Shown here in pieces: positions 4,699 to 52,354 of a stretch of 64,000 nt of DNA; positions within the stretch are counted from its first letter, which is position 1; every line of letters begins with the position of its first letter. The notes below the pieces were generated by a model, which saw nothing but the letters and a program-made list of their open reading frames with translations, was not told where the DNA came from and made no database searches. The DNA is from Lytechinus pictus (Eukaryota): positions 2,232,001 to 2,296,000 of the forward strand of contig NC_087252.1 of the NCBI RefSeq assembly GCF_037042905.1. The letters are read 5' to 3'. The translations under genes and the position numbers were made by a program.

Positions 4699-4765
4699 AT
4701 GGCGGCCAAACGAATGCATCTCTCTCTGTGGGTCGTATATGCTTTTGTTTTCTACTTCTTTTTAG
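4699..4765 (+). CDS. Copy A exon 1, signal peptide (MAAKRMHLSLWVVYAFVFYFFL)
   Basis: ATG, basic N-region, hydrophobic core, donor G|GTATGT; conserved at 41574-41640. Confidence 0.8.
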
Positions 4766-7700
4766 GTATGTAGTGATTTATTTATTTGCAGTGATTTATT
4801 ATTTGCAGTATTTTGGGGATGTCTAGTGACCGAGGCGTGACTAGGCTGAACGATGTTACGTATAAGCCTAAAGCAGACACATTCATATCAAGGAAGTTTG
4901 GCAAAATTTACGTTGTCACGCCCCACCCATTATATACCTATAAAGCCTCGTTTTGCCTCTATCAAATTCGAAAGGGGAGGGGAGAGGGGGGTCTTTTCTA
5001 GGTTAATGTATTTACTTGTGCTTCTTTTTTCGTCTTGTCCTATAATTTTTATTTCGCTCCAACTGTCAAAGCATGCACGCTAAAGAGTATGAACTAAAAA
5101 AAGTTTTGAAATCTGAATTTGAACGATAACTTCTCCATTTTTTGTGTGGATATTAATGTATGATTAATACAAATGAATAGACCATTTAATTTTCTTTAAA
5201 ATGATGCCCTACTTCATTGATATTGTTTTTCCTACAAGATATATAGGGGATGTACTCGCATGTGACGTCACAAATGAAAAGACAAAATTATCGTAATCTA
5301 AGTATTATCTCTGATTCATTTTCCTAAAAATCTCCAATATAGTTCATGATTTTTCTGCTAATTTCTACAATAAAGTCTAGGTGACCTTTCCCTTTAAAGT
5401 TTCCCTGGCGCTTTTGGTAAATATAATAGATATAACAGGCATTGTTGTTTCTAGAGGCTCTAAAGAATCGCAACTCAACTTAACATTTTACTTACCATTA
5501 CTACATGCCTTAACTGATATAGTGAAATGAACTGAAACACATAATACTGAAAAAACAGTAGCTTATAAACGTTTCCTGTGTCATTTAGGGATACGTGGTG
5601 ACGTTCCTGATGATACTGTCTACACCGAGTTGCACAAAGATGTTAGAATAGGAGACAGTGCAGTATTGACATGCCATTTTCGAGGTTCACCGTTGGCTGT
5701 CTATTGGAAGAAAGGTGATGACCCAAGAAGCGCACCAAACCTTGTATCATGGATTCCTTCTGATGACGTCACCGGTTTATGTGAAGGTCAAAGACCATGT
5801 GAGATCATGGAGATGAATGAAAATCGCTCCTTGGTCATCAAAGAAGTCAGTATGGCCGAACAAGGTCGATACATCTGCAGAGTTTCTAACTACAAGGGAA
5901 TTCTAATACACAACTTCACAGATATCAGACTGTTTTGTAAGTATTTTGATTTCCGACCTGATCATGTCCTCTGCGTTTTACTGCGTAACATCTTAGATTT
6001 AAACATTTTTAACGAGTGCTTTCATATAAGAGTAAACAGTCCCGAATTCAGAACCCTTAGACCCCCACTAAGAACTTAACATGAAGGGGGGGGGGGTCAC
6101 TCAGGTCTGGAAATAAAATGATTTGACCAGATACAGTTGAATAAGAAATACGAGTCAAGAAGATTATGATATTTTAAGAACTCAATCTGTGTTTTTGGAT
6201 GAAACAGCACTGGTTAATGTTGTTGAATTAATTTTCATTCAAATGGTATCCTGCAGCAATGTGAAAATAGGATTGACTATACTGATTTAGCATGTAAGAT
6301 AACCATTGCTGCAATTTAGCAGTGCATGGGAGATTTATCATATACACGTGTGTGAAAATATAAAGTAATCAAGATTTAATGCAGTAACGTAGTAAACTTT
6401 TAGAGGGGACATGGTATCATGGGCCTTTCTATTGCATAGATATGAAATGAGAGAAATAAATTGAATTGAATTCATCTCCATGACAGCGTGAATAAAACGG
6501 TTTAAACAAAAGATTGCTAACCTTTAAAATTTAATGACTCTACTATTAATTTTGATCAGATTCATTTTATATATGTATAGCTGAGCAATGAATAATACAT
6601 TACAATCTCTTCTATTGTAGCTCCTCCTGTAGAACCCTACCCAATCATCAACCAGTGTCAGAGAAAGGAAGGTTCTATGAAATCTACTTCTCCTTCAAAG
6701 GGTTGCAGGATTTCAACCGACACGCCTGTAAACATCACATGCTCAGTCTTCGGATTCTACCCGGATATCAACCTGTTCTTCCTTCATGGGTCTTCAAAGG
6801 TAACCAATTTTAAGAGTATTGAGTGGGAAAATGAAGACGGTTCTAAGAACCAAACCATATTGATAGAAGCTAGAGTCAGTGACCGGCCATATGTATGCAT
6901 TGCGTCAGATGTACCTGGTTCAACAGAGGAGAGAGCCTGGGAGATATTCCTAGATCGAGTCCCTTCAGATGAGACAACGTCAGCCAATCCCGAGAAAGGT
7001 GATATAAGTAGTGCCACAAATCCCGCGAAGATTGGTAAGCAAGCATTAATTAATCGGTATAGAAATGCATTCTTATGTTTTTATTCATTATAGAAACGTT
7101 GCATGTAATTTTAGCAATGATTTTTCCCCATTCAAATTATAACTTTTTAAAAGCCCCCTAATGTGATACAAACTCAGGCACTGACGTTTAAGATGAGATA
7201 ATATTATTATGACATCAACAAAAACTTTGCTCTCACAATCTCTGAAATCGGTGTGAATCGGGTTCCAACTGCTAATTTCAGGTTTAAGATGAATTTGCCA
7301 GTAGAGTTTGAATTTGATTAAAATGTTTCAATGGTTAACAGATATAACATGATTACCTGCAAATCAAAACAAGTGAATATACCTTGTAAGCAATGTGACT
7401 ACACAAGATAAATAGTGTTTAGATGAAACACTAATCTGATAATCACATTATTTAGTAATGATATAAATATACATGAATATAAAACTAAATATAGAATAAT
7501 CTGAATTATTAACCGAACATGTGAATAAAAAAACACGAATCCTTGCACTGAATCTAATAACTGACGGTTGTAGGTAGACCCGATGTCAACTCTGTAAATG
7601 CAAAGGAGCTAATCTGGTCAGTAATCGTTTATTTTCTGTATTATGCATTCATATTGAATATATTTTGTTTATTTTCAACTTATCATTTGATTACAATTCG

Positions 7701-8975: not shown

Positions 8976-9007
<32 letters not shown>

Positions 9008-12000
9008 AGGGTGTGAGGGTGTGTGTGTGTGTGTGTGTGATTTGGTGTGCGGGTGTGTGTATACACATTTGTAAGGAGTAGAGTAGAATTAAGGATGGAT
9101 CAAAGTATACACTATGTTGTAAAACTTTTCGGCCCTGGCCTTCTTCATGTTTTATTTGCTAAACAAAGCAAATAAAGCAAACCATAGAATAAACAACAGA
9201 ACGAACATAATGGTAAATAATACCAAATTAAAGGAAAACCAAAACACATATGAGAAATGTTAAGGTAATAACACGAAATAAGGATCATACTCAACAGAAA
9301 GAAAAAGTAAAGTGAACTAGTATATATATACACACACATACATATATATATAATCCTTCAATTGTTCAAGTTCTAGGAGTAAATTATATTCCGACATTCA
9401 TCATACATGTAACCAAATAAGAGCTGTAATAAAGATATTATAAAGTTCAAAACCTATTTTACCCACACAGTGGTACCAATCCTACTGATACTTGCAGTCG
9501 CCACGGCATGCATGGTATTCTTGTGGCGGAGATCAAGGAAACGGCAGGCCAGACGTCACATAGGTAAGAATTGTAATTCATTCTGCACATTTATGTAATC
9601 TCGGTTTATTGTTATGTAGTATGTATTTAACTCCCTGTTATCCTTTCAGTCATTCCCCTTCACTTGTTTATAAACTCCCCCAATGTCATCTAAGAATCCC
9701 AAAACCCCCAATACCATTTAACTCCTAAACCTTGACCATAAAAATACCAACCCCCATTGACGTCAGCTAACTTCAAGGAACAAAAATTCTAAGAAGTATG
9801 ACTCACACTTCCAGCCCCAGTCACTTGCACAGAGCATCACCACACCCCTTTTACCAGAGAAAGTTTGATAGACAGTTACCTGTAGACCCAGAACAAGTTT
9901 AGATCACTCCCACCTTAAATTGTTATACCCCCAAAACTAATGTAAGACTTTTGATTAGAAGGAGAGAGAGAGAATACTAGATCCACACTCATCGATGTAT
10001 AGACTGACTGACTTCAAGACTTAGACGGCCATCAAATATTATCTTAACTTCACAATCTCAATCTTATACTTCGAAATTAATCATATTCATCGTCTCCTAT
10101 AATATCTGAATCTTCATGTACATCGAACTGTAGCTGAATATTGATGATTAAATACCCAGTGATTTTGAACTGTATAACTTTCTCCAAAGTTTCTTCACTA
10201 CGCTTCCCTTTTAAATTATTATTACCGATCCCAACACGACATTATTACCACAATCGTTTAGTAGTCACCACTTGCATACGGATGGGGAAGGGGATTCTGG
10301 CTTCCAAAATGCTCTATAACATAGGGGGGGGGGGGTTACAATTAATATGTTGCCTATTATGTGAAAATCTGTAACAGAATTCATTTTCCATATAAAAGAC
10401 GCAAATATTTCGCTTGCTCTTTGCACTCGCTCACGACATGTTTGAAAATATATATTATTCAGGGTGTTGCGCCGTTTAAAAATATTTGTTATATTATGCA
10501 ACCGGTACCACTACATCATTGTAATCAATTGGTTTGATACTGATTGGCTAGACTTCCAATATAACACCAGACTATGGAAATAAATTGTAATATCTGAAAA
10601 GGATTCAATTCAGAATAAATCAATTTGCCATGTTTTACACTGTAGGTAGACGTGATGTCGAGGAGTCAGAGTTATTGGTGCAGAAAATGAAGGTACAAGG
10701 TAAGTGAAGCACGAAAACACATTAGCTAAGCATTAAATACGACAGGGAAGGAACTTGTCTTAAAGGACAAGTCCACCCCAACAAAAACTTGATTTGAATA
10801 AAAAGAGAAAAATTCAACAAGCATAACACTGAAAATTTCATCAAAATCGGATGTAAAATAAGAAAGTTATGACATTTTAAAGTTTCGCTTCATTTCACAA
10901 AACAGTTATATGCACATCTTGGTCGGTATGTAAATGAGGGAACTGATGACATCACTCACTCACTATTTCTTTTGTATTTTATTATATGAAATATGAAATA
11001 TTTTGATTTTCTCGTCATTGTCATGTGAAATAAAGTTTCATTCCTCCCTGAATACGTGGAATTCTATTATTTTAAAATGTTGTGCTTCAGGCAAGGAGGT
11101 CATAATTGTCAAATTCGTAAAAAATCAAATATTGTATAATTCAAACAATAAAAAACAAAAGAAATAGTGAGTGAGTGACATCATCAACTCTTTCATTTGG
11201 ATGTATCTGGCTCGTTCATATAACTATTTTGTTAAAAATAAGCGAATCTTTGAAATGTCATAACTTTCTTATTTTACATCCGATTTTGATGAAATTTTCA
11301 GCATTGTGCTTGTCTGATTTTTCTCTATTGATTCAAATCAACATTTTTCTGAAGTGGACTTGACCTTTAAACCTGATTCTTCATCACCATATTATCCAAA
11401 TATATGGCACCACGCCGACGCGCTTGGTGTAAAACAAACAACGTAATCAAATAATAAAAAAAATATAGTGGAAATAACTTAAAACAAAAAAGGGTATTAA
11501 GTTCGACAAAATAGCTTAATTATCATATATCTGTCCAAGCGTTCAAAAAGACAACAGGCCCTTTTTTACACGTTCAGTAATGAACTGCGATAAAAGGAAC
11601 GAAAATGCATGTTCTATCTTAATTGATAGGGAATTATTGTATGAAAATCAAGCGCAGTATAAATCATAGCAAGTTAATGTTTTGAACTAGTTTTTTTTTA
11701 CACATTTCCCATTAACAGGGGTTGTCTCTTTTTATGAACTGTGGCTACTGGCTTATGACACTCCGAATGATGAGATGGCAAAGGTATACGCTGCTCTTGT
11801 TAAGCTTGGTATTACCAATATCAAGGGACAAATGGGTAGAGGATTTGTGTATGATGCTCTTTGTGAATGGAAAGAGAGATCATATGCACCTGACCAACCA
11901 CAGATGTTAAGAGATGCCTTAGAGGAAGTGGGCCTTGAGAGTACATGGCAAGTTATTTATGGTATGTATTTTCATTTCTTCCATTCAATATTAACAAACA

Positions 12001-15000
12001 TAGTTCTTATTCCTATTTACTTGCCATTTTCCTTTGGGTTTTACACCATAGTCTGAATGGGGTTTCCAAAGTTTCCCTTTACATCTACACATTCCCCCCG
12101 AATTACCATTTTAACACCATTATTTAGACATTATTAACACATGTTCTTTCATGGTTCCTTTCCTACTTTTTTCACAATACAGACCAAGTGCGACAGGTCA
12201 ATTATTCTACCAAAGTACCAGAAGGAACATTCGAACAAATCCTGCTTGACCTAAAAGAAAAAAAAGCAATTAAAAAATTCCTTAATAACTTGTGTCAACG
12301 AGAAAATGTAGTCACAGAAATTGAGACAATCAATGACTCAAATGACTCTGAAGAGGGCAATATGGACGTGGAAAAGTCAGCTCCCGCCAAAGCAATCAGT
12401 GCTACCCACGACGGTCAAGAAAACAGAGAAAACACAGCTCCCGCCAAAGCAATCAGTGACACGCATGACGGTAAAGAAAACAAGGAAAACATAGCTCCCG
12501 CCAAAGAAGTCAGTGATATCCATGACGTTGACCAGAACAAGGAAAAGTCAGCTTCCGGCATGCGAAAGTTAAAGGAATGGAATAAAGGTCCTTTCAAACA
12601 GAATCCGTTTGTTCTAGTCAGTCTTGCTCTAGAGAGAGCAGGTTATGTCCATATCTCCAAGACCTTCTTTGACGGTGGGTATCTTTCTATTTGACATAAC
12701 TGTTACACCAGAACGGTTTACTGACATCATTGTGATTGATGTGATGACTTGAGAATGAGTTTTCACAATTATGGTACTTCACTTTAATAAGTTGGTTAGT
12801 TTACACCTGCGGTCCTTTAAAAAAAAAACCTCAAAAATAGTACTTTGTGATTGAGGAAAAAGAACGTTTAAAAAGAATAACTTAAGCCCCGTAACAAAAA
12901 GGTTAGCGATGAATCGCTAATTTGAAAGTACAATTTCGATTTGTTCCTCGTCAGTCTAATCAGCAAAATGCGCATGCAACGATGATCTTGATAGGCCGTT
13001 TCATTTAACAATTCTTCGCTAATCTTTGTGTTACGGGGCCAAGGTTTATCTTCATCAATAGCGTCTCATTATTTTCATGACTGCAGTATTAGTGTTTGCA
13101 TATTTATGCCATTTTACTACCAGAAAAGATTTACGGTATCTGATGATTTTTCGGGAGCACCAAAATATGGCAGGATATATTTGCTTGATCATGTTGAAGG
13201 TACAGCAGAATAACACCTTTTGATAATTTGAAAGTGCAATGCTACCTAATGGTCAGAAAAAAAGGTATACAATCTATCGTTTTAATAATACTATATGAGT
13301 CATGTTGTATATATGCATTTGTGATGAGTAAACAAGGTAAAATGTATTGAATTACGTTTGTCATTATTCGACTGTGAATTACACACTTTAGACATAAATA
13401 AATGTATATTTAATTTTGTTATTTTTTGTTAAATGTATTGATAAATCTACAAAAGAGGCGCAGATATTAACAATCGTCCAAAACATTCCCTTGCAGGCCC
13501 TGTATCCTATTACGAGCTTAGATCATTGATGCACGACCTACATACACCTAGCCTAGAGAAGTTAAGAAAAACAATTTGCGAGCTAGGAATCGACGAGACA
13601 AGTGCAAATAACTTTGGTCCGCAACAAATCTACGACTATCTGTGTCAGTGGAAAGACGGACACCCCCAGGTAGATCAAGGAAAATTATTACATGACGCGC
13701 TTTTAAGAGCCGGTCATGAGGAAGCCTGGTCGAAAGTCTTAGGTAAGTAAAGTAGCAATATTTCGTTTTAACTAATTGAACGTTACATGAACACGAAAAT
13801 CTCATATGCCTAAATAATAATGATAATTCTAATAATAATGATAATAATTATTATTATTATATACCTAAATCTATATTTTACAATTGTACAAGATACCAGT
13901 TTAGTATGCTGCCCTTTCCATATGCAAACTTGAAAACGCAATGTTGACCAAATTACTCCATCATGAGAGAAGGTTTCATTACTAAAATTCCATCTACTCC
14001 CCCTCAAAAAAAAAATTAAAATAAAACATGAAGAAAACAAAACAGGCAAGTATAATGCAAATAAAACAACAAGTTTTGATCATGATCCAGGTGCCGTTTT
14101 AACGAACGAAACAGTTTAATACGCCATTATGTTACAACTGACCTTCTAGCATGTTAATAACGATGGTTGTCATTACTTGCACGCTGTACATGCTGTAAGC
14201 AATCTTTTACATTTGCACAACGCATTTTACCATTACAACAATGCACCCTGGAATACACCAGACGGTGCCCTGTACTCTTTCTAGAAGAGTAAGAAGTAAT
14301 AATGAAAATGATAATAATACTAAAAAACGTATTATTACTTTCATACAAAATGACGATCTACATAAAGACATAAATTATGTTGTTTCCCAAATAGAGATTC
14401 GTTTTGTTACAAATATATAAAACAAAAAGTGAATTTACTATGTGTTGAACCTTCCCCCTTAAGAACAAAGGAAGAAAAAATCAGATGTATGTGAAAGTAC
14501 GTTCAAGAAGATACTCTGTAACGTCACAGCCCCAGCAGTGATACAGCAGCTCCTGAAAAGGCTAGACCCAGACATAGCTAAAGATTTGGATACCTCACTT
14601 GAGACAGATTTTACGCCAAAAGCCTTGGAAGCAATGAAGGAATGGAATGAAAGACCTCTCAATGAAAATAGAATGATCTTGTTAAGCCGTGCCTTGGAGA
14701 AAGCTAAATGCAGGCCGATTGACATGACTTTTCTCTACGGTAAGAGGTGGAGTGAATTTTCTTACACCCATTTTATTTTCGTCTCGCCGGCATAGCAGGT
14801 CGTGACATAGGCGCCGCTTTTCCGACGACGGCGGCGGCGTCGTCGACATTGAAATCTTAACCTGACGTTTTTGAAATGTCATCTTAAATTAAAAGGTATA
14901 AGGACCCATTTCATGAAACATAAACGTAGTGGTAATCAAGTATTACTGAACATCCTGCTTAGCTTTCAGGTAACATGATCAATGTCAAAGGACATTTAGG

Positions 15001-21444: not shown

Positions 21445-21479
<35 letters not shown>

Positions 21480-27400: not shown

Positions 27401-30400
27401 CGACGGTCAATCCTGTTTAATGACAACGAAATCATTTTTGTTTCACCATTCCAAAAATAAGGAGAGAAATGACTGAACATAAACGCCAAAAATATGAGAG
27501 AGATAGAAAAAAAAAAGTTTACATCGTATACCTCACCTGTTTAGAGAGTTTTCTTAAAAACACATTAAATGAATTTACAGTCTATTTCGTTAAAGGGATG
27601 GAGGGTGGTAACATTTGAGTTAACCAGGTAAACCAAATAAAAGGTAGTAAAAATGTAACAAATAGAGCCACAAGAGAAATGCAACACAAGAATTGGAGTG
27701 AGTCAGGGAAAACGGTTTTGTGTTTGTGTATCTTCGGCGCCGCTCAAATATTAGGGGGGGGGGCGCGCGCCCCCTGCGCCACCCCCTGGATCCGCCACTG
27801 AGGATGATTATGTTTTGATCAGCATTTGAAAGGAATTTGCGGTAAATGCGGTCTAAGGTACAACCATTTCTTAATTTTATATATTTTCTTGGTTGTCTTA
27901 GAATCACCTTTGAATCATAGAATAATCAGTAGAAAATATATTTTCAAAGACATCCTATTAAAGATTTGCAAAGTGACCTTTCAATTTGAGATTTTTTTTT
28001 TGTATGTATATTATAGATATTATTAAAAAAAAAAAAAAAACATAAACAGATGGACTATCACGGGCAAAGCTTTTATTGTAAGATCTTTACAGTGACATTT
28101 TTTTTAAAATGAGTTTTAATTTAAGTCCTTCTTATCCCCATGTAGTCCCAGTTCAACTCCAAAAGACCATTGGAAATGAAGAAGTAAGTGAATTCGTCCG
28201 TAGACTTACAGGAAGGCATCGCAAGCGATTGGCAAACGAGACACCGGCGACTGAAGACAAGAAAATATCCAACTTTGCAGAAGAAAACAATGAAATGTTG
28301 TTTGATGCAAAATCTATGGTTCGAGACTGGATTGAAAGTGAGCAATGCAGTAATTATGAGAAGAGATGTAAACTGGATGACACTCTGATTAAAATTGGTC
28401 GACATGATATGACAGGTAAACATACGATAAAAAATATTGTGATTGACGTATCATATCTCTATTTGTATTTACTTGAAAAGTCTGTTCTTAAAAAAAGGTA
28501 TATAATTTCATTCAACATTAAATATTTCCCCGTTATTGTGAGTCATTTACATGCACATTATATTTAAAAATATGTAAATTTACACATTTGTTTATTTTAG
28601 TAAATTATTTTTTATGTGAGAGTTTAGATGAAACTCTCACATAAAAAGTAGTTTTCTTCCCCATAGTTCCATATACAGGATATTGTATTGTTGTAGGCAT
28701 ATACTTGAAATTTGTGAACATAATCGTCCTGTTTAAAAAAAATGCACGTTCATAGTTCAGAGTTTAAACACTTAAAATAATGATAATAAATAATGATCAC
28801 GATGACGACGACGATGATAATAGTAATAACAACAATTATAATAACAGTAATAATTAAAATTATTGTACAATATACATGCATTTACGTAGCGAAACATCTG
28901 TCTTTACATGTTCTATTGAGCTGCAGGAGATCACTAGACGCTCTACGTACATGTACTACCAATTTAGAGCACTTAAAGCATCAATCGTCCTGATTTCATA
29001 AAATGAGAAGGAAATCTAAATTACTGTTTGTCTTTCTGAAAACTCTCGTTATCGGCAGATTTTTTCAGCACAATTCAGTTTCGGCGAAATACAGATCCCG
29101 AACTCTCGGCAAAATTGCATCCGGAGTCAAAAACATTCCGTAAGTGTTTATTCCATATCTTTCTTCATAACCCTATTCATTCAGGAACTATTATTACTTC
29201 TAAGAAATATCACATTTATAATTTTCGTTACCGTTTTGCAGCGTCCTTTGTTTATTAGTTTTATAACCGAAAGGGCTTTCCTAAATAAAACTGAAATTTA
29301 TAAGTACATATTATTCTTTTTAAATTGTACACATCATTTTTACGTCCTTTGTAGAACACATTTATCGCGTCTATAACAACTATGCCATATATCTAGAAAA
29401 AACCCCTTAAACTTTACACTTTTGAAATGGCTGTAAAATGAAGACGAAACACAATTCTGAGAAGAAAGTTTACATGCGTGAATAATACAACTCACCTTTC
29501 ATATGACGTCAATTTCGTTCAAACAGTAGATCGCCTAAGCTTAATCATTCATTTTTATCAAAGCAGTGAAAATGAGGTTAGGCAGAAATCGATCAGGATT
29601 TCAACATGAACAATTTTTTCGACCATTTGGTAACAAGTGGAAATTAAGTCCATGAGCTATCGATATATTTAAACATCTCCCAGAACCGCATGTTTGTTTT
29701 TTGGCAGTGATTTTAAAGTGTAGAGGGTTACATTTTACACACACGTATTTGTCCTACACCTCGTGTAAACTTTCGATTTTTTAAATTATAATTATGGGAA
29801 CAACTGTGGATCTTGTACTACTACATGATTATAGATCTTGCGACGATCTTCGACGATGATTTAATCAGGCTAAGAATGCTAATGACTTGCCTTGACGAAG
29901 ACATGATGGAAGAGTTCTGCAGGAAAGTAGGTATACCTCTTAAAGTAGAAGGACCGAAAAGGAAGGGTCCAGACATGATTGATATTCGACAATGGAGAGA
30001 CAGTCACATACAGTATACAGTGAAAGAATTCTTCTCAGAAATATCTGGATTCATGACGAATAAAACGAAAGGTAAGGACCGATAGGTGTGTGAGATAGCA
30101 ACTCCAGCCTATTTTTTGCGAATAATTATCTTTCCAGAAGAATTGAACGATGTGCTTCATCATTTGGAGAAATATCTAATTAGGCTTCAAGAAATCAAAC
30201 GTTTTTTCAACTCCTAATTACAACGATGTACAATCAGTACTGTAACACTTTTTTTCTATATCCATTTTTATTATACAGTTTACACGTATAATTGAAGCAC
30301 GTGGCTTATAACTTTTTTTCGCAAATACATACCTGTTCAGATGCACCCTCTTTTGATAAGCTTAAAGATTACGAAGTAAAATCAAAATAATACAAAAATT

Positions 30401-33400
30401 ACTTTACACAACTATTGTAAAAGTTTTATAATTACGTTTCTTAACGACCTAAATTTAAACATTAAAGAGATAATAATGTGTTGTTTTTTCGATGGAAACC
30501 CACATTTTCAGTAAACTTTGTAACGGATCAAGAACTTGATTGGCTGGTTTCTCAAGCGACAATCGATGACAAGTTGGAAAAGTTTACCGATATGAAAAAA
30601 ATCCACTGGAGGAGGTCAAAAAGGATTGCAGGAAAACTTAGGGGTAAGCTAATAGCTGTGACATTCTCGTTATGATGTTAACTATCATCTATACTTTTTA
30701 AGTTAAATTTGACGTTTAAGTTTGAACTAAAATGAAAAATGCCCGAAGAGGAACTTTTTAATAGATATATGAAAATCGAAGTCCTGTTTCGTGTTAAATT
30801 CCAGATGTCAAAACTAAACTAAAATATCTTCTAAATGTACAGTTATACGTAATTGTATTAATTTTTACATTGAATTGTCATGATTATCATTAAATGAAGC
30901 TACACTCAGCTTATTGTCTGAAGACCACGATGAAAAATATCAACCTAAGTTTGAGCGATCACTCTCACAAGAAGGAACAGGCGAAGAAAAGGTCGGTTAT
31001 CATGAAGAATCGCAGGAAGAAGATATATCTTCGTCTGATCCGTGGCAACAACTGAGATTATGGAGAAGAGAGCATGTAGACAAATCTTGTCGAAAGTCAT
31101 TGAGATCCGCTTTCAAATATGTAGGGCTAGAAGGTAATTATACACCATGAAATCCCATTGAAACATCGTTGACTGAGTATTTTTTCTTCATAAGGTGCAC
31201 ACTTATTCATTTCCTTCTTGTCATCATCGGCCACTGGATTCCATGACGAACGAAATATGTAAGATATGAATAAATAAATTGTGATATCGGCTATTTGAGA
31301 GTTTTTATATATTGAGGGAATTGTTGTGGTTCCGGATAAGGCACAGAGAATTAATATTATTTTGTTTGACACGATTTCCCTGTCTTTTGTATTATTTATT
31401 GGCTTTTAGTGATATTTCATTTCATTTATCTCACATTAAATACCCCACAGAAAATTAAAGAAATCCCTTTTTTTAATATGAATGGTATGTTATGTTTTTA
31501 AAGTATATTATTATCCTCATGTTTTTTAAGTAAAACTCAATTTGGCATAATATTTTGACAAATCTGGATTTGTCCAGTNNNNNNNNNNNNNNNNNNNNNN
31601 NNNNNNNNNNNNNNNNNNNNNNNNNNNNNNNNNNNNNNNNNNNNNNNNNNNNNNNNNNNNNNNNNNNNNNNNNNNNNNNNNNNNNNNNNNNNNNNNNNNN
31701 NNNNNNNNNNNNNNTTGTGAATGAACTTCTCAAGGGTGGGGGGGGGGGGGCACTTCCGAGCGGATGTCATGCGCGACCATGGAGTCTCGAAAAGCACCCT
31801 TAACAAGTACTTTCCATATTCTGAAAATGCACCCCTTAAGAAGTATTGGCGTGTAAAACCCTACCCTTATCAAGTATTAGAAACAAAACACTCTTGGCAA
31901 GTATTCCCTGAATCATTGAACCCCTAAACAAGTACATCGATATTCGAATTGATATATGTCACGGACGTCGGTTTTACCTTTACCTACATGTACATCATTG
32001 GGTTTATAACGGCCCCACCTCCCACACCTCCCACAGTGTTGACTGTTGGGGCAATCCTTTATAAAAACATTTTAGTCTTTTTTATACCCTCGCAAATTTG
32101 ACCCTAAACACGTAGCTTTCCTAGCGAAATAGATACCCTTTTTTAATTATTTCAGTTTTTTTGACACCCTTATTACGTTACGTACGCAACGTGCCCTATC
32201 TTGAAAAAGACATCCTGTTTACGTGTTTTGGGGGTCGCGCATGGTATCCACTAGTCAATGTAAATGCCACCCGGGGAACTTCTATGATCAGTTAAAGCTG
32301 AATGAAAGTAGTTGCAGTAAAACACTGATTTCGGGAGAAAGTCTGTAAAACCAAGGTTAAGTATTAATATATCATCGTGGATCTAGATCTGGTACAGTTA
32401 CATAAACTGAACTTTGTGAAATCACAATATATAGCTAAAAACGATCACACTGAAGATCGCCAACACATATAGGCACACGTGGGACAGTGTATTATTGTTG
32501 CTGGAGTAAAGACCCGACGGAAGTGACCGAATCCGCGCTTATTTTGCTTATTTCTCAGCAATTATACAATTTCTTCAAGAATTATTTGGCACATATTTTT
32601 TATTCATAGAAACAGACACTTTGGTGATCATTATATTAAAATCCTGTAAAAAGCCATTTTGAGATCATTCCCACAAATGGAATTTATCTTTAAATGAGAA
32701 AAATGTATTTCTAGTTCGCAAATAAAGATCCTTTATGGACATTTGATTGATTCCAATAGAATGCATCGTAAACAAGACGCCACGGGAAAAGGTGTATGCA
32801 GTTGAAATTGTACAAGCAGCCTTTCACATATTGATGACAGACGTTTATCCGATCATAGAGACACTGGATTTTTACCAGAAGACGATTTCGAAGTACATGA
32901 GGCAGTGCCCTGTTCTAGACAAAGGATCGGTGGATCTTCTGTTTCAGATCTGCAAATATCTTGAGTTGAAGAACAAATCTGAGAGCTACGATCGTCTTGA
33001 TTTCTGTATGAAGCTTACAAATATGGGTTATGTCGATGTTGCAAGATCTATATATCTAGGTAGGTTGTCTCTTCATGATAGGTTATTATGTTGTTTAGGA
33101 ATATATTCAGACTTTGGAAGCCAGAGGAAGGATGTTTTCCGATATAGGGTAGGCCTATCGACCTTTCTCAGAAGTTGAGTCTTTATGGATCGTTATAGAT
33201 ATTGAAAGAAGCAGGAAGTTGGAGGAACAGGGATGTAAAACAACACCTATTGAAAGTAGCTTTTTTTGTTTAACCAAAAAATGTCGACTTATTTATTGCG
33301 TGTCAAAAGTTACAGAAGTCTACTTTCTATTTTTTCTATTTCCCATTTGTTAAAGGAATTGATTTCTCTATGCAGAAGTTAAGGCAATGATTTCTTTTAA

Positions 33401-34830
33401 CAAAGGCCATTCATTAGAAAATTAAAAAAATACAATCCCATTAGATCGTAATTAATCTGACTTAATGTCTAGATAAAAGTTTACATGTACATCAACGAAG
33501 ATAGGGATATTTTGTAATCAAAGATTACAAAGAAGCATTTTCTTCACGCTATGTTCTAAAGAAGTCATGTTGACCCCTACCATATTTTATGGCCCCATAT
33601 TTATAAACACTGCTCGATTGAGGGCGTTGCAGACTAAACTGTCCGTCCCGCGCATGACAGTTTTTTTATTATGTTAAACAATAGGGTGCTACCTTTTTAT
33701 TCATCTAAATATAGATTACGAAATGAGTATTAGTGAGCTTGCTAGAATTGCCTCTGAACTGAACAAGCGTGACCAAACAATGTTCAAACCTCTTATTGAT
33801 CAACTGGATTTGAGACCTGGTGAACTTCCGGAATATCAGGGAGTACAATTTGAGACATACTGTTCGGAGGTGCTAAGGACTTGGAAGGAAAAGATCAGAC
33901 CTGTTCCGTATCACTACCGAAGGCACATCGTTGATGGTCTCCAAGCAGTTGGATATTCTAATCTTGCTGATGATGTTCTGAAAGGTAGGCCTTCCCAATT
34001 TATTCAGGACATTTAGAGGCTTTCTATCAGGGAGGGGCATTACTCAAATTTCTTGCAACAAAATTTCAAATTCAAACACAAAATCGCTACTCATCTGTAG
34101 TTAGCCTGATTTCAATTGGAACTTGACTTTGTTGCAACGCCCCGCACTTGAAGTATAGCAACGCCCAATTAGTCTGTAAAGTATGGATTCTATAAACTTA
34201 ATTCCTAGATTTCGATTTGTTGTACCTACCTTTACATGTATCTCCCCGTTTGTTTATGTGATGATTGTCAATTGATCGATCATTAAGCTATTTCCATCTG
34301 CATGCACCAAACGTGCCCAGTACAGGTTGACGTAGTTGAATATTCAACCTTGTAATTTGTGAAGGATGTGAGATTTTCATAACACATACCGTATATCAAC
34401 TTTTCCTTCAATATGATTCCTTCCTTATCCTTCGTGAATAGTGATACTGGAAAGATAGCTTTCCAGTTTGTTTTGGCCATTTATTTCACCAATGTTAATA
34501 GTTTGCTTTAAATCATTGTTTCATACTTTCAAAGGCCTTCATCGACATGAATCTCCCGACGAAGATGTCATTGAAGATATCTGCAGTAGACTCGATGACA
34601 CTCAGATACTGAATCTTGTTCGAATCCTGAAACTTACGCCTGATCATGATGAACAAGATCGGAAAAAATCAACCAAATTGATTGTCAGCTGGGCTGATAA
34701 GTGGATGAGAAAGTATGATTCCTCGGCTATATCATTTAAAGAGAGAAGATCAGTAAATGATGAGCTTGTTAAAGAGGGGTTTTACGAGTTAGCCCATGAA
34801 ATAATGATACTAGAATATTCGAAGTTCTAA
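4699..34830 (+). CDS. Gene copy A (18 exons, ~1500 aa): Ig V + C1-like ectodomain, single TM, ~12 tandem cytoplasmic death-fold-like domains
   Basis: Manual splice model with AG/GT boundaries: 4699-4765, 5589-5936, 6621-7034, 9471-9563, 10646-10699, 11719-11961, 12183-12674, 13497-13742, 14464-14739, 15954-16202, 16802-17083, 28146-28415, 29835-30071, 30512-30643, 30900-31133, 32760-33059, 33715-33984, 34535-34830. Total 4503 nt, open throughout. Every internal exon length is divisible by 3 and all introns are phase 1. Exons 1-11 are conserved in copy B. Confidence 0.8.
5589..5936 (+). CDS. Copy A exon 2, V-set Ig domain
   Basis: G-D-S-A-V-L-T-C, YWKK, SLVIKEV, EQGRYICRV motifs; acceptor tcatttAG, donor T|GTAAGT. 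Confidence 0.9.
6621..7034 (+). CDS. Copy A exon 3, C1-like Ig domain plus S/T-rich stalk
   Basis: ITCSVFGFYP (CxxxGFYP), NEDGS, YVC motifs; ttgtAG / G|GTAAGC. Confidence 0.85.
7590..8094. mobile_element. Hairpin MITE shared by both copies (copy B 44488-48461), interrupted by different retro-insertions
   Basis: Inverted arms gagctaatctggtc...agagtgagataagggaccagtc / gactagtcctttatctcactct...gaccagattagctc. Confidence 0.65.
7627..7897 (+). mobile_element. 5'-truncated LINE 3'-end fragment (copy A only)
   Basis: Absent in copy B; terminal stem-loop cacgg...ccgtg, AATAAA, short (TATC) tail. Confidence 0.5.
8158..8960. mobile_element. Non-autonomous Tc1/mariner-type MITE with long TIRs (copy A only)
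   Basis: TA|CAGTGCGTCCCAGAAA...TTTCTGGGACGCACTG|TA; arms inverted over roughly 300 bp; absent from copy B. Confidence 0.85.
8982..9060. repeat. (GT)n microsatellite
   Basis: Directly visible. Confidence 0.9.
9471..9563 (+). CDS. Copy A exon 4, transmembrane helix and basic stop-transfer (VVPILLILAVATACMVFLW-RRSRKRQARR)
   Basis: 19 hydrophobic residues then an Arg/Lys cluster; cacAG / G|GTAAGA; conserved at 48689-48781 while the flanks diverge. Confidence 0.85.
10646..10699 (+). CDS. Copy A exon 5, 54-nt juxtamembrane micro-exon (GRRDVEESELLVQKMKVQ)
   Basis: ctgtAG / G|GTAAGT; conserved in frame at 49244-49297. Confidence 0.75.
10764..11366. mobile_element. TTAA-target MITE (Kolobok/piggyBac-like; copy A only)
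   Basis: TTAA|AGGACAAGTCCAC...GTGGACTTGACCT|TTAA, long internal palindrome; empty TTAA site in copy B near 49343. Confidence 0.85.
11719..11961 (+). CDS. Copy A exon 6, death-fold-like unit 1 (alpha type)
   Basis: VSFYELWLLA...LG...YDALCEWKE...LRDALEEVGL pattern; AG/GT boundaries. Confidence 0.75.
12183..12674 (+). CDS. Copy A exon 7, death-fold-like unit 2 (beta type) with 3x 19-aa repeat insertion
   Basis: VPEGTFEQIL...LKEWNKGP...LALERAGY; three APAK-x15 repeats; AG / G|GTGGGT. Confidence 0.75.
12379..12549 (+). repeat. Coding 57-bp tandem repeat x3
   Basis: gctcccgccaaag(c/a)a(a/g)tcagtg... units. Confidence 0.9.
13497..13742 (+). CDS. Copy A exon 8, death-fold-like unit 3 (alpha type)
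   Basis: VSYYELRSL...ELGI...YDYLCQWKD...LHDALLRAGHEEAW; ttgcAG / G|GTAAGT. Confidence 0.75.
14464..14739 (+). CDS. Copy A exon 9, death-fold-like unit 4 (beta type)
   Basis: VCESTFKKIL...MKEWNERP...LSRALEKAKC; acceptor cccttaAG (in-frame alternative at 14485), donor G|GTAAGA. Confidence 0.7.
14775..15690 (+). mobile_element. Helentron-associated (DINE/Tsp-like) non-autonomous repeat, shared with copy B (~53290-54195)
   Basis: TTTT start, short subterminal inverted motif, (GGC/GTC) microsatellite, internal tandem units rich in AGGTCA, ends ...ccacttgtt; related fragments near 4245-4330 and 40950-41200. Confidence 0.5.
15954..16202 (+). CDS. Copy A exon 10, death-fold-like unit 5 (alpha type)
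   Basis: MSYFELWSM...MG...YHLLCKWKE...LLNEGLHKEW; tcAG / G|GTAAGT. Confidence 0.75.
16453..16648. mobile_element. Small MITE-like repeat with internal CCCTAA motifs (also ~55113-55308)
   Basis: Imperfect TIRs tgacatttgtt..gacaatt / aattgtc..aacaaatgtgtca. Confidence 0.5.
16645..16694 (+). other. Perfect 20-bp GC-rich hairpin in intron 10 (copy B 55305-55354)
   Basis: gtcaccgtggggaaagggga-taggcggtag-tcccctttccccacggtgac. Confidence 0.85.
16802..17083 (+). CDS. Copy A exon 11, death-fold-like unit 6 (beta type)
   Basis: ISDETLEHIL...LELWKKGP...LSEALESAKC...TFF; tttcAG / G|GTAATT. Confidence 0.75.
17464..18035 (+). repeat. Left arm of a ~570-bp near-identical inverted repeat in intron 11
   Basis: Reverse complement of 27315-27895. 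Confidence 0.9.
18290..19118. repeat. GGCGCC-rich minisatellite (~20/41-bp units)
   Basis: Repeated aagaataatcagcgcc / taaatcggcgccgg units. Confidence 0.9.
19545..20045. repeat. Tandem units carrying ctcgcgcttcgcgctcgca motifs (interspersed repeat interior; copy B ~57880-58380)
   Basis: Motif recurs 4x at about 19566, 19777, 19889 and 20011. Confidence 0.6.
21488..25195 (-). CDS. LINE ORF2: APE endonuclease, reverse transcriptase, RNase H, C-terminal CCHC
   Basis: IQETW, GDFNSH, SDH; YRPISL, PQGS, YADD; YTDGSK, WIPSHC..GNE; CEVC..HYVLFC. The frame is open up to 25246 and includes IVQWNAQG. Confidence 0.95.
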   Translation of the reverse strand: MVSHGSDFLTSLFDNDLLGSNPDIICIQETWFNDFNVSFIPNYFCVCRNRQDGRRGGLAMYFKKDIAFQVMKVQELIEYQRVDIFSKKCIISIINYYNPCKKIELEELNFMIRNVPGKLIILGDFNSHNPLWGSSKLDSNGRTVESFMEVNDLALLNDGSPTRLDPHFGSYSMLDLSIVSKELACSMEWQVLTNNFGSDHNAIVIKLIQTNNVNIKENATIGFRWSFRNVNWEEYRKAITNELLNLNYKRHYSACNLDIQGRYDMIVKVILNASKRCIRRVRIGGENRGKITPWWNEACQKAVAERNHIKNRLRRYYDKNDVQLYLKKKAFAQKVQRRARYDYWSKYCGKMNKFTDIGKVWKQVKGMRDSAMNTHIFHNLIVDGNIISESKDKANAVARFFKSIDRSFYNNDHDDGENEDNLCKEMSNDDCINDDFNMNEMKNVLQDLNNSAPGKDDIHAIMLKNLPQIALDVILDMYNDIWKTSHFPCQWYEVVQIPILKPGKDPSLVSSYRPISLLSTLFKVMEKMIKNRLNWFLDNKKKLNPLQSGFRKYRSVKDHLVRIETDVHLALKEKKYTVAVFLDLEKAYDSLWKGGLLKKLSMLDISGKLFFFIRAFLRNRYCNVKVNNSMSDKYVLEHGIPQGSSLSPVIFTLMLNDLNIKESGVKLSCYADDIAIWFTSSNLDLVRQKLQEALHEIEIWCWRWKLNISHTKSVVLVFTNNQKKDITLKINGHVLPHCEQFKFLGMWLDSKLTWSSHINAIIDKCKKRLNLLRCVSGTSWGNRYDILMMIYKGLILSVLDYGSEMYDSACTSHKKKLDSIQYRALKIITGTIYNVSLESLQVLTGELPLYLRRKLFNDKFRYYLLFSTLCHPSREIFIEHTNRHEWKEGERPFKLRACSDEVLVEKQDNLLTRIPEWRLSRPPVSFCAHRIIRKKDMLTAEMKAIVLERIGIVWNGYLHIYTDGSKQENFRTGAAFYVPQYKIKKYFRLSNVSIMRAELLAILMALEWLESFDKPCSVVIFCDSLSALNVIDSYFIKCTIVNEILFKIHKLSMNDICINFEWIPSHCDVNGNEIVDKAAKKGAAKNFVDIVLPNTINELTCSRMTFYKSIWQADWNASRNGRFLYAIHDNVFKQAYRKGFSRKEECLLHQITVGKCKLNYYMFQIKQHSSGLCEVCKEFETIEHYVLFCLKYVKERCIMFNKLKMNDPNLKQLLINPDYTRELLCFIYATNRFYS
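25243..26658 (-). CDS. LINE ORF1 gag-like protein with three CCHC zinc knuckles
   Basis: CHKCQLFGHMKENC, CVRCGGEHDFEEC, CFRCGDKHSAAYQGC. Confidence 0.93.
   Translation of the reverse strand: MANNLSISSGEEDYLAAASNRFRQAPDELVVSSDDHTVHGEDSYDESNCSWKTAINRNSIRSAKKRARVRSNSDSTLNTKHSKMPKFSTPTHSSRRVVIVGLENKNICRANPVQVFKEIHNLVGNLNGKEKVKNMMILKCENDIQVMKLLELTKLAGVDVKATRYEDNHDFTTKGVIHRIDTQISNEEIAEVLKDQKVIHAKRFMKKIDGEIVPTPSVLITFKGKDKPETVNFLYELKRVDNFSPPVPRCHKCQLFGHMKENCKGKLRCVRCGGEHDFEECPQKENRKCFRCGDKHSAAYQGCKIYIEAKQIQKVKLKENITYAQATRVYRTQKNEIVEEESKTIRTSDTKENTQRKLKNVGPISNSMASDHESIQQSKIPRPIRVQRNNEGRRERDKESGQGTESNNQKKDTVNTLMSVAPLDFIMFILFVIRKLPQSENDDQFLEYVVHASRNFLKTDIPLEMVKCHLK
27315..27895 (-). repeat. Right arm of the ~570-bp inverted repeat in intron 11
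   Basis: Reverse complement of 17464-18035. Confidence 0.9.
28146..28415 (+). CDS. Copy A exon 12, death-fold-like unit 7
   Basis: AKSMVRDW...KLDDTLIKIGRHDM matches the death-domain helix 4-6 signature; tgtAG / G|GTAAAC. Confidence 0.75.
29835..30071 (+). CDS. Copy A exon 13, degenerate death-fold-like unit 8
   Basis: DDDLIRL...EFCRKVGI...IRQWRD; atAG / G|GTAAGG; 237 nt, phase 1-1. Confidence 0.6.
30512..30643 (+). CDS. Copy A exon 14, N-terminal half of split death-fold-like unit 9 (VTDQELDWLV)
   Basis: ttttcAG / G|GTAAGC; 132 nt, phase 1-1. Confidence 0.6.
30900..31133 (+). CDS. Copy A exon 15, acidic linker plus C-terminal half of unit 9 (WQQLRLWRR...LRSAFKYVGLE)
   Basis: In-frame acceptor gaAG at 30898-30899 (weak pyrimidine tract, so the start is uncertain); donor G|GTAATT. 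Confidence 0.55.
31579..31714. other. Assembly gap (136 N) in copy A intron 15
   Basis: Run of N. Confidence 1.
32296..32689. mobile_element. TTAA-target MITE-like element
   Basis: TTAA|AG...CT|TTAA with weak TIRs. Confidence 0.45.
32760..33059 (+). CDS. Copy A exon 16, divergent death-fold-like unit 10
   Basis: EIVQAAFHI...FCMKLTNMGYVDVARSI; caatAG / G|GTAGGT; 300 nt. Confidence 0.65.
33715..33984 (+). CDS. Copy A exon 17, death domain unit 11 (most canonical)
   Basis: MSISELARIASEL...QLDL...EVLRTWKEK...IVDGLQAVGYSNLADDV; atAG / G|GTAGGC. Confidence 0.8.
34535..34830 (+). CDS. Copy A exon 18 (terminal), death-fold-like unit 12 ending LEYSKF*
   Basis: IEDICSRL...LVRILKL...KW...ELVKEGFYELAHEI; acceptor tttcaaAG; stop TAA 34828-34830. 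Confidence 0.7.
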
Positions 34831-41573: not shown

Positions 41574-41640
41574 ATGGCGGTCAAACGAACACACCTCTCT
41601 TTGTGGATCGTATCTGCTTTTGTTTTCTACTTCTTTTCAG
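41574..41640 (+). CDS. Copy B exon 1, signal peptide
   Basis: MAVKRTHLSLWIVSAFVFYFFS, donor G|GTATGT. Confidence 0.8.

Positions 41641-52301: not shown

Positions 52302-52354
<53 letters not shown>

What the first reader, a model, noticed from the sequence alone, without database searches (positions are those of the whole stretch)
4699..34830. Ig-superfamily membrane receptor with a cytoplasmic chain of about 12 death-fold domains
Seen: 18 exons splice in frame into ~1500 aa (SP, IgV, IgC1-like, TM, then twelve ~80-100 aa helical units). Most units share 'EL..(L/I)A ... LG ... L..W ... L..AL...G' spacing, clearest in exons 12 and 17. No kinase, TIR, NACHT or caspase motif was seen. Established: known death receptors (Fas/TNFR1, UNC5, p75) carry one death domain. 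Death-domain signalling uses helical oligomers of roughly 10-14 domains (PIDDosome 12, Myddosome 14). Inference: this may be an undescribed receptor class that carries a covalently pre-linked death-fold scaffold, acting either as a ready-made signalosome seed or as a multivalent decoy for adaptors. I do not recognise this architecture in any characterised protein.
Basis: partly seen in the sequence, partly recalled or inferred. Interest (0 to 1): 0.92.

Follow-up and report, generated by a model that had tools for sequence, protein, structure and literature searches.

The report
Urchin Ig receptor, twelve death domains
This sea urchin (Lytechinus pictus) locus encodes a membrane protein with two antibody-like outer domains and an inner chain of about twelve divergent death domains; it belongs to an uncharacterised sea-urchin-only gene family, and current annotation cuts the gene in two.

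Summary
Nineteen exons (4699-34830, + strand) join in frame into 1527 aa. Every intron is phase 1 with AG/GT borders. The N gap lies inside intron 14 and touches no codon.

Residues 1-921 are identical to RefSeq XP_063959102.1 (LOC135154841). Residues 922-1527 are identical to residues 13-618 of the product of LOC135154972. RefSeq therefore models head and tail as two genes. Only the junction E10 (17083) to E11 (28146) lacks a model here, but at least eight related RefSeq models use the same junction.

The twelve cytoplasmic units are divergent death domains:
- Profile-profile matches to a validated death-domain profile give 82-96% probability (36% for one unit type).
- AlphaFold2 predicts two six-helix bundles for one unit pair.
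- Foldseek's only compact matches are RAIDD, RIPK1, PIDD and FADD death domains.
- Pfam on single exons stays below threshold.

The family ground plan is Ig-Ig-TM plus about eight units. Twelve arises from a recent triplication of a two-exon pair, so the link to 12-14-mer signalosomes is not supported. Other tandem death-domain proteins exist in echinoderms. Function is untested.

Verdict: a real, uncharacterised new variant of a known kind, of moderate interest.

The parts
4699..4765 (+). E1: start codon and signal peptide (MAAKRMHLSLWVVYAFVFYFFL)
   Evidence: identical to the RefSeq XP_063959102.1 N-terminus
5589..5936 (+). E2: N-terminal Ig domain (V/I-type), phase 1-1 exon
   Evidence: Pfam Ig_3 4.6e-9, I-set 1.3e-8, V-set 2e-5; PDB sequence hits to LRIG1, CD276 and TCR alpha V
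6621..7034 (+). E3: second Ig-like domain, subtype unresolved
   Evidence: Pfam C1-set only E=0.074. The paralog P0061 has a second Pfam 'ig' stretch at the equivalent place.
9471..9563 (+). E4: transmembrane helix plus basic stop-transfer RRSRKRQARRH
10646..10699 (+). E4b: 18-codon juxtamembrane linker exon (RRDVEESELLVQKMKVQ)
   Evidence: present in the RefSeq head model
11719..11961 (+). E5: death-domain unit A1
   Evidence: Unit A profile vs validated DD profile: hhalign 87%; shuffle control
12183..12674 (+). E6: death-domain unit B1, with a 57-nt (19-aa) tandem repeat (12370-12557) inserted in a loop
13497..13742 (+). E7: death-domain unit A2
   Evidence: AF2 six-helix bundle, pLDDT 88.6 for the A2-B2 pair; Foldseek compact hits to RAIDD, RIPK1, PIDD and FADD DDs; Pfam Death E=0.071
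14464..14739 (+). E8: death-domain unit B2
   Evidence: AF2 six-helix bundle; hhalign 91%, 85 columns
15954..16202 (+). E9: death-domain unit A3
16802..17083 (+). E10: death-domain unit B3. Strong donor AAG|GTAATT. The RefSeq head model reads through it to a stop whose last base is 17139 (last sense codon ends 17136).
20986..27059 (-). Copy-1-specific non-LTR retrotransposon in intron 10. It has intact ORF1 (25243-26658) and ORF2 (21488-25195: endonuclease, RT, RNase H) and a CTTGAT target-site duplication. It is not part of the protein but probably causes the annotation split.
26914..26950 (+). First exon of the RefSeq 'tail gene' LOC135154972 (MDWRWLGSGTDA). It lies inside the retrotransposon, antisense to it.
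28146..28415 (+). E11: death-domain unit, the most conserved unit type in the family
   Evidence: hhalign 95.7%, 83 columns, E 1e-8. Pfam Death E=0.042 here. The whole-protein Death score passes the cut-off in S. purpuratus members, with the best stretch on this unit.
29059..29139 (+). E11b: 27-codon linker exon
29835..30071 (+). E12: short death-like unit, the weakest assignment
   Evidence: hhalign 36%, score 24.6 vs shuffled maximum 13.4
30512..30643 (+). E13: first half of a death-like unit
30900..31133 (+). E14: acidic loop and second half of the same unit
   Evidence: hhalign 82%, 68 columns
31579..31714 (.). Assembly gap (N), inside intron 14; not coding in this model
32760..33059 (+). 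E15: death-domain unit
   Evidence: hhalign 94.7%
33715..33984 (+). E16: death-domain unit
   Evidence: hhalign 95.0%
34535..34830 (+). E17: last death-domain unit and stop codon
   Evidence: hhalign 91.4%
41574..55796 (+). Head of the tandem duplicate gene (LOC135154842, P0050). Its tail (LOC135155022, P0002) starts about 3.2 kb beyond the window end.

Best explanation
The span 4699-34830 is most likely one gene of Lytechinus pictus. It would encode a 1527-aa type I membrane protein with this order: signal peptide, Ig (V/I-type), second Ig-like domain, transmembrane helix, then twelve divergent death domains (A-B-A-B-A-B, E11, E12, E13/14, E15, E16, E17). Almost every domain sits on its own phase-1/phase-1 exon.

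The gene belongs to a sea-urchin-restricted, tandemly clustered family. The family ground plan is Ig-Ig-TM-A-B-E11...E17. In this gene, its tandem twin and one neighbour, the A-B pair is triplicated.

Shown: the exon structure, the Ig domain, the TM segment, the death-domain homology and fold of the units, family membership, the tandem duplication, and purifying selection on both head and tail.

Inferred: a single transcript spans the TE-filled 11-kb intron 10.

Inferred mechanism (speculative). The Ig ectodomain binds an extracellular or cell-surface ligand. The catalytically inert tail works as a multivalent death-domain scaffold. Its neighbouring units pack on one another: pTM is 0.83 for an A-B pair and 0.70 for the paralogous tail. 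The scaffold would recruit death-domain adaptors or kinases by homotypic contacts to start, or to buffer, immune or cell-death signalling. Because all exons share one phase, units can be added, lost or skipped without breaking the frame. That explains the variable unit number among paralogs.
For: Gene model:
- In-frame 19-exon model, all introns phase 1.
- Head identical to RefSeq XP_063959102.1; tail identical to residues 13-618 of the LOC135154972 product.

One gene rather than two:
- The predicted E10/E11 junction TFFQ-V-PVQLQKTIG matches junctions in models that join unit B directly to E11: P0051 (TFFQ-I-PVYLQKTIG), P0052, P0007, P0008, P0058, P0059 and Diadema P0003. P0054 also carries both units, with about 40 intervening residues.
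- Full head+tail models exist in paralogs and orthologs: P0061, P0059, P0054, P0058, P0004/P0048.
- RefSeq cuts three neighbouring paralogs at three different places. The window's 'tail gene' starts inside a young, copy-specific LINE.
- The locus is a tandem repeat of head-tail-head-tail.
- dN/dS is 0.49 for the head and 0.45 for the tail, with no stop in any exon of either copy.

Death domains:
- The profile of the 12 units hits P0019 at E 1.6e-9 on the residues Pfam calls Death.
- hhalign against reference A7 gives 82-96% for seven unit types. Scores are 25-47 against a shuffled maximum of 11-18.
- A7 itself hits solved RIPK1, PIDD, ankyrin, TNFR1, CRADD and FADD DDs at 1e-13 to 1e-7.
- AF2 models the A2-B2 pair at pLDDT 88.6 with 6+6 helices.
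- Foldseek's compact hits are all DDs: rmsd 2.8-3.9 A, target-normalised TM (TMt) 0.56-0.66, probability up to 0.92.
- UniProt names the S. purpuratus member A0A7M7ND19 'Death domain-containing protein'.
Against: - No transcript data were available. RefSeq models the head as ending by read-through after E10 and the tail as a separate gene. That could reflect real transcripts, such as premature termination in the TE-laden intron or a LINE antisense promoter.
- Pfam Death is below the gathering cut-off on every window exon (best E=0.042).
- Profiles of the units find solved DDs only at E 0.2-0.8.
- No Foldseek hit reaches E<=0.001. The whole-tail model (pLDDT 70.6) gave no useful match.
- Unit E12 is weakly supported.
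- The alignments fed to AF2 were shallow (22-25 sequences), and the tail model was a 70-97% identical paralog, not the window's own sequence.
- No partner, ligand or expression pattern is known. Nothing here tests the mechanism.
Confidence: 0.6

Rival explanations
1. Two genes, as RefSeq has it. One is a head-only receptor (Ig-Ig-TM plus six death domains) that ends by read-through after E10. The other is a separate cytosolic protein of about six death domains, transcribed from a promoter in intron 10 (in copy 1, the antisense side of the LINE 5' end).
For: - RefSeq models LOC135154841 (939 aa, stops after E10) and LOC135154972 (618 aa, first exon 26914-26950).
- The same split is made in the tandem copy (P0050 and P0002).
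- Intron 10 is 11 kb and full of transposons in both copies.
Against: - The tail 'genes' start at ad hoc places: inside a copy-specific young LINE, at an internal Met of exon E11 even though the whole exon is conserved upstream of it (97% aa), or at E11b in the third paralog.
- The upstream paralog's head model runs B3 to E11.
- At least eight related RefSeq models join unit B directly to E11 (P0004/P0048, P0007, P0008, P0038, P0051, P0052, P0058, P0059).
- The E10 donor and E11 acceptor are intact and in matching phase.
Confidence: 0.22
2. One gene, but the tail acts as a decoy or brake rather than a signalling seed. A membrane-tethered chain of degenerate death domains would soak up adaptors, or occupy its own interfaces intramolecularly, and so damp death-domain signalling.
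For: - The units are strongly diverged from canonical DDs and fall below the Pfam threshold.
- AF2 suggests the units pack against each other (pTM 0.83 and 0.70).
- There is no catalytic or TIR output domain.
Against: - Nothing tests direction of signalling.
- E11 and B units carry strongly conserved family-specific motifs, which suggests specific partners rather than decay.
- dN/dS of about 0.45 shows constraint.
Confidence: 0.2
3. The tail exons are a decaying remnant. The retrotransposon and the inverted repeats in intron 10 have broken the gene, and E11-E17 are no longer expressed as protein.
For: - A young intact LINE (20986-27059) and 560-nt, 98-99% inverted repeats flank most of intron 10.
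- RefSeq ends the head at E10.
Against: - All eight tail exons keep open frames and AG/GT sites in both tandem copies.
- Tail dN/dS is 0.45 at dS 0.21, the same as the head.
- RefSeq does model the tail exons as coding.
Confidence: 0.08
4. The units are generic helical bundles that only mimic the death-domain motif.
For: - Pfam on single exons and PDB sequence-profile searches are not significant.
- Foldseek E-values are all above 0.1.
Against: - Profile-profile matches cover the full length at 82-96% probability and lie far above shuffled and reversed controls.
- The unit profile hits a Pfam Death region at E 1.6e-9 in a library of 1.8 billion proteins.
- Every compact structural match is a death domain.
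Confidence: 0.05

Closest known systems
Echinoid 'uncharacterized' Ig/death-domain family (e.g. L. pictus LOC129267154, L. variegatus LOC121419568, S. purpuratus LOC105437304 and LOC105438791, Diadema XP_071495348.1)
   Same: These share the same unit types in the same order (IgV-Ig2-TM-A-B-E11...E15-E16-E17). They form tandem clusters on one chromosome. The window gene is a member: its head is identical to XP_063959102.1.
   Different: Most members have one A-B pair (about 7-8 units). The window gene, its twin and LOC135154838 have three pairs. None has been studied.
UNC5 netrin receptors
   Same: Type I receptor with two N-terminal Ig domains and a cytoplasmic death domain, and no catalytic domain.
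   Different: UNC5 has thrombospondin repeats and a ZU5-UPA-DD supramodule with a single DD. Here Pfam finds no TSP1, ZU5 or UPA, and there are twelve DDs.
TNFR-superfamily death receptors (Fas, TNFR1, DR3, p75NTR, NRADD)
   Same: Type I membrane proteins whose only cytoplasmic signalling module is a death domain that nucleates helical DD oligomers.
   Different: Those have cysteine-rich TNFR ectodomains and one DD. Here the ectodomain is Ig and the DDs are covalently repeated.
Other echinoderm tandem-DD proteins (Acanthaster LOC110990671: 10 Pfam Death stretches + ZU5, plus a weak sub-threshold UPA match; Patiria LOC119732801: 4; Anneissia Roc-COR + 3)
   Same: Long covalent arrays of death domains in one polypeptide, also uncharacterised.
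   Different: Those have canonical Pfam-positive DDs, no Ig ectodomain and no TM. They belong to different families.
Tandem death-fold modules: caspase-8/cFLIP/vFLIP tandem DEDs and RIG-I/MDA5 tandem CARDs
   Same: Covalently linked death-fold domains that pack against each other and seed or cap helical filaments. This is the nearest mechanistic analogy.
   Different: Those have two domains, not twelve, and belong to the DED/CARD subfamilies. Foldseek superposition of the A-B pair on tandem DEDs is poor (rmsd about 16 A).

Membership tests
Death domain superfamily (Pfam Death PF00531 / death-fold) | Significant match to the family's sequence model | tested here: inconclusive
   Window exons: best Pfam Death E=0.042 (E11) and 0.071 (E7), both below the 22.6-bit cut-off; the other exons give nothing. 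The whole-protein score passes the cut-off in S. purpuratus members P0053 (25.5 bits) and P0055 (26.9 bits), but no single stretch passes on its own.
Death domain superfamily (Pfam Death PF00531 / death-fold) | Profile-profile homology to bona fide death domains | tested here: met
   hhalign against A7 gives: A 87%, B 91%, E11 96%, E13/14 82%, E15 95%, E16 95%, E17 91%, E12 only 36%. A7 is built from Pfam-positive echinoderm DDs and itself hits RIPK1, PIDD, ankyrin, TNFR1, CRADD and FADD at 1e-13 to 1e-7. Shuffled and reversed controls stay at or below 7%.
Death domain superfamily (Pfam Death PF00531 / death-fold) | Six-helix antiparallel bundle fold | tested here: met
   For units A2 and B2 (window E7+E8): AF2 pLDDT 88.6 with six helices each. 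Foldseek compact matches are all DDs (RAIDD 2o71 prob 0.92, TMt 0.65, rmsd 3.5 A; RIPK1, PIDD, FADD, ankyrin-G), although E-values exceed 1. For the tail units, a paralog model shows 4-6 helices per unit, but Foldseek on the whole chain was uninformative.
Death domain superfamily (Pfam Death PF00531 / death-fold) | Homotypic helical oligomerisation through type I/II/III interfaces | not testable with these tools
   No complex prediction or model coordinates were available. Only pTM values (0.83 and 0.70) hint at fixed inter-unit packing.
Immunoglobulin superfamily | Ig domain recognised by the sequence model | tested here: met
   Exon 2: Ig_3 37.1 bits (cut-off 30), I-set 35.3 bits (cut-off 23.7). 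Exon 3 is only weakly Ig-like (C1-set E=0.074), so the 'C1' label is not established.
Type I membrane receptor | N-terminal signal peptide and a single TM helix followed by a basic stop-transfer sequence | tested here: met
   Read directly from the sequence. No dedicated predictor was run.
TNFR-superfamily death receptors | Cysteine-rich TNFR repeats in the ectodomain | tested here: not met
   No TNFR_c6 or related Pfam hit; the ectodomain is Ig.
UNC5 family | TSP1 repeats and a ZU5-UPA-DD cytoplasmic supramodule | tested here: not met
   No TSP1, ZU5 or UPA hit in the window exons or in P0001.
Echinoid Ig/multi-DD family (RefSeq uncharacterised LOCs) | Same ordered unit types, with the conserved B-to-E11 junction | tested here: met
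   Unit maps of about 40 proteins and junction comparison. The profile search found only 47 proteins at E<=1e-3 among 1.84 billion representatives. The true members whose source organism was looked up are all echinoid.

The most novel reading that the evidence does not exclude
The twelve covalently linked death domains fold back on one another into an intramolecular helical assembly. This would be a pre-built, membrane-anchored signalosome platform whose free end is exposed or completed on ligand-driven clustering. Frame-neutral exon skipping (every exon is phase 1-1) could tune the number of units per isoform. That would be a new way to build a death-domain signalling hub, distinct from assembly out of single-domain subunits.
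Probability: 0.15. Interest if true: 0.85.

Novelty: new variant of a known kind. Interest (0 to 1): 0.55.

Why it matters
Death-domain signalling is understood as the assembly of many single-domain proteins into helical oligomers. A receptor that carries 8-12 death domains in one chain, conserved across sea urchins and under purifying selection, offers a natural test of what happens when the oligomer is partly hard-wired.

The finding also adds a defined, tandemly expanding receptor family to the known echinoderm expansion of death-domain proteins (87 in S. purpuratus against 31 in human, PMC2246300).

On the practical side, it shows that current RefSeq annotation splits at least three of these genes at transposon-filled introns. 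Domain-architecture surveys therefore undercount them.

Tried and rejected
- Pfam on each exon: Ig found, Death only sub-threshold, no other signalling domain.
- Profiles of the window units or of each unit family against PDB sequences: only weak death-domain hits (NRADD E=0.25, PIDD1/LRDD 0.2 and 0.79, RIPK1 0.6), mixed with noise such as designed helical repeats.
- Pfam on the 24 isolated E11-type units: only 1 reaches E<=0.01.
- Foldseek on the 553-aa tail model: dominated by long helical-repeat proteins, not informative. No AF2 jobs remained to model single tail units.
- Literature: seven full-text searches plus reading PMC2246300, PMC2575513, PMC8195603, PMC11087794 and PMC3342036 found no description of an Ig-TM-(DD)n receptor and no mention of the LOC identifiers. 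The Dev Biol 2006 sea urchin apoptosis and immune surveys and the Science genome paper are not held, so an earlier mention there cannot be excluded.
- Poly(A) hexamers after E10: present only at background frequency, not informative.
- Rfam: no RNA family in the window.
- Gap flanks are not repeated elsewhere in the window.
- Rejected idea: that '12' mirrors PIDDosome or Myddosome stoichiometry, because unit number varies from about 7 to 12 among paralogs.

Full report
ORGANISM AND ANNOTATION. A profile of the twelve putative units (A1) was searched against 1.84 billion representative proteins. It returned only 47 hits at E<=1e-3. The top hit, P0001, is RefSeq XP_063959102.1, 'uncharacterized protein LOC135154841' of Lytechinus pictus. 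It maps to the window at essentially 100% identity. The window is therefore L. pictus chromosome CM073233.1.

THE GAP. The N run 31579-31714 lies inside intron 14 (31134-32759). No codon crosses it. The E14/E15 junction (GLE-E-CIVNK) equals the junction in the gap-free tandem copy's protein. Relative to copy 2, copy 1 has about 1.4 kb of extra intron sequence around the gap. This suggests an insertion that hampered assembly. I did not look up or fill the letters. Physical continuity across the gap stays unproven, but divergence from copy 2 is similar on both sides.

GENE MODEL. All stop-free + strand segments with suitable AG and GT sites chain into 19 exons. Every intron is phase 1. The CDS is 4584 nt and encodes 1527 aa with no internal stop. 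Two small linker exons, E4b (10646-10699) and E11b (29059-29139), bring the count to 19. Residues 1-921 are identical to the RefSeq head model. Residues 922-1527 are identical to residues 13-618 of P0071, the product of LOC135154972. Every exon border is thus independently used by RefSeq. The only junction without a model at this locus is E10 (17083) to E11 (28146).

ONE GENE OR TWO. RefSeq ends the head by reading through the E10 donor into the intron, to a stop whose last base is 17139. It starts the tail at a 37-nt exon (26914-26950) spliced to the E11 acceptor. That first exon lies inside a non-LTR retrotransposon (20986-27059, minus strand) and is antisense to it. The element has intact ORF1 and ORF2 (endonuclease, RT, RNase H) and a CTTGAT target-site duplication. 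It is absent from the tandem copy, whose empty site is visible. This start therefore cannot be the ancestral start of a tail gene.

- The window holds a second copy of the head (41574-55796, LOC135154842). Locus L001 overlaps the window end at 100% identity. It shows that P0002 (LOC135155022) is that copy's tail, about 11.4 kb after its E10.
- P0002 starts at an internal Met of E11, although the complete E11 exon is conserved upstream of it.
- A third neighbour is cut elsewhere. Its head model (P0051) runs B3 to E11 and then stops. Its tail model (P0072) starts at E11b.

So three paralogs are split at three different points. At least eight other RefSeq models join unit B directly to E11 (P0004/P0048, P0007, P0008, P0038, P0051, P0052, P0058, P0059), and full head+tail models exist (P0061, P0059, P0054, P0058, P0004/P0048). 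The predicted junction residue here (TFFQ-V-PVQLQ) matches those models.

Between the two tandem copies, dN/dS is 0.49 for the head and 0.45 for the tail. No exon of either copy contains a stop. I put about 65-70% on a full-length transcript existing, possibly alongside shorter isoforms.

DOMAINS. The signal peptide and the TM helix with its basic stop-transfer sequence are plain in the sequence. Exon 2 is a confident Ig domain. Its closest solved relatives are generic: LRIG1, CD276, Robo and TCR-alpha V. In three paralogs the Pfam 2B4 (CD2/SLAM-type V) model passes its cut-off. In the window exon it scores only 12.5 bits against a cut-off of 21, so this is only a lead. Exon 3 is Ig-like, and the C1 label is unsupported.

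THE UNITS. E5, E7 and E9 are paralogous (type A), and so are E6, E8 and E10 (type B). They form a triplicated two-exon pair. E11, E12, E13+E14, E15, E16 and E17 are six further unit types.

Direct Pfam evidence is sub-threshold, and unit profiles find solved DDs only weakly. Four stronger lines agree:
- (i) The unit profile hits P0019 at E 1.6e-9, on the residues Pfam calls Death at 6e-19.
- (ii) hhalign of each unit-type alignment against reference A7 gives 82-96% probability over 68-85 columns. Type A matches over 39 columns, and E12 reaches only 36%. Thirty column-shuffled and one reversed reference never exceed 7%. A7 was built from Pfam-positive echinoderm DDs. It finds RIPK1, PIDD, ankyrin, TNFR1, CRADD, FADD, DR3, NRADD and Fas DDs at 1e-13 to 4e-4.
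- (iii) AF2 on the window's A2-B2 pair gives pLDDT 88.6, pTM 0.83 and two six-helix bundles.
- (iv) In Foldseek, every compact match is a death domain: rmsd 2.8-3.9 A, target-normalised TM (TMt) 0.56-0.66, probability 0.6-0.92. The E-values are above 1, as is common for small helical domains.

The paralogous tail model (pLDDT 70.6, pTM 0.70) shows 4-6 helices per unit, but Foldseek gave no useful match for the whole chain.

FAMILY AND EVOLUTION. The true members whose source organism was looked up are all echinoid: L. pictus, L. variegatus, S. purpuratus and Diadema. They form clusters on one chromosome. The ground plan is Ig-Ig-TM-A-B-E11-E12-E13/14-E15-E16-E17, about 8 death domains. Unit numbers range from about 7 to 12. 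One domain per symmetric phase-1 exon explains this plasticity and allows frame-neutral exon skipping. dS between the tandem copies is patchy (0-0.57). The E10 and E11 exons (dS 0.02-0.03) and intron stretches near them (16389-17626 at 98.5%; 27063-27734 at 99%) are nearly identical. This suggests gene conversion.

COMPARISON WITH KNOWN SYSTEMS. Vertebrate death receptors and UNC5 carry one DD. Tandem DEDs and CARDs come in pairs. Echinoderm databases already hold other uncharacterised tandem-DD proteins, with up to 10 in an Acanthaster ZU5-containing protein that also gives a weak UPA match. Expansion of DD proteins in sea urchin is documented (PMC2246300, PMC8195603). I found no paper describing this family. 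The key 2006 surveys are not in the library, so an earlier mention cannot be excluded.

VERDICT. The 'class' is an existing but unstudied echinoid family. The 12-mer numerology is not supported, and the one-transcript claim needs RNA evidence. The mechanism (a multivalent DD scaffold that either activates or acts as a decoy) is inference only.

Noticed in passing
window 41117-58878 (and beyond 64000, via L001): The whole gene is tandemly duplicated as head1-tail1-head2-tail2, with a period of about 37-38 kb and 82-98% nucleotide identity. The head of copy 2 is LOC135154842. Its tail, LOC135155022, begins about 3.2 kb past the window end.
   Followed up: yes
window 12370-12557 vs 50437-51038: A 57-nt (19-aa, NTAPAKAISDTHDGxENKE) tandem repeat sits in a loop of unit B1. 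It has about 3 copies in copy 1 and about 11 in copy 2. P0051 also has an expanded B1. This is a variable, probably disordered insert inside a death domain.
   Followed up: partly
window 20986-27059 (- strand): A young, apparently intact non-LTR retrotransposon lies in intron 10. ORF1 is 471 aa and ORF2 is 1235 aa with endonuclease, RT and RNase H. It has a (GTT)n run on the + strand at the element's 3' end, a CTTGAT target-site duplication, and an empty site in copy 2. The RefSeq 'tail gene' starts inside it on the opposite strand, which may indicate an antisense-promoter chimeric transcript.
   Followed up: partly
window 17464-18021 and 27337-27895: A pair of roughly 560-nt inverted repeats, 98-99% complementary, lies 9.3 kb apart. 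One arm is just inside the E10 end of intron 10 and the other just inside the E11 end. Copy 2 carries part of one arm. The origin (large foldback or TIR element, inversion, or assembly artefact) is unexplained.
   Followed up: partly
window 58879-59135 and L001 8184-8440: A 257-nt direct repeat (99.6% identical) flanks about 6.6-6.9 kb of copy-2-specific, GC-richer and strongly GC-skewed sequence in copy 2's intron 10. It looks like an LTR-type insertion.
   Followed up: no
window 44898-47843 (+ strand): A second, different non-LTR retrotransposon ORF (981 aa, endonuclease + RT) lies in copy 2's intron between the Ig2 and TM exons. It is absent from copy 1.
   Followed up: partly
window 18327-19019: A satellite-like tandem array (41-nt unit with 103/123-nt higher-order periods, about 17 copies) lies in intron 10. 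It is shared with copy 2 (56539-57200).
   Followed up: no
window 16389-17626 and 27063-27734 vs copy 2: Sequence around E10 and just upstream of E11 is 98-99% identical between the tandem copies, while other exons differ by 10-30%. dS ranges from 0 to 0.57 between exons. This patchwork suggests gene conversion.
   Followed up: partly
RefSeq models LOC135154838/-971, -841/-972, -842/135155022: Three neighbouring family members are each annotated as two genes, cut at three different positions. Domain-architecture counts from the current annotation will therefore miss the full Ig-TM-(DD)n proteins.
   Followed up: yes
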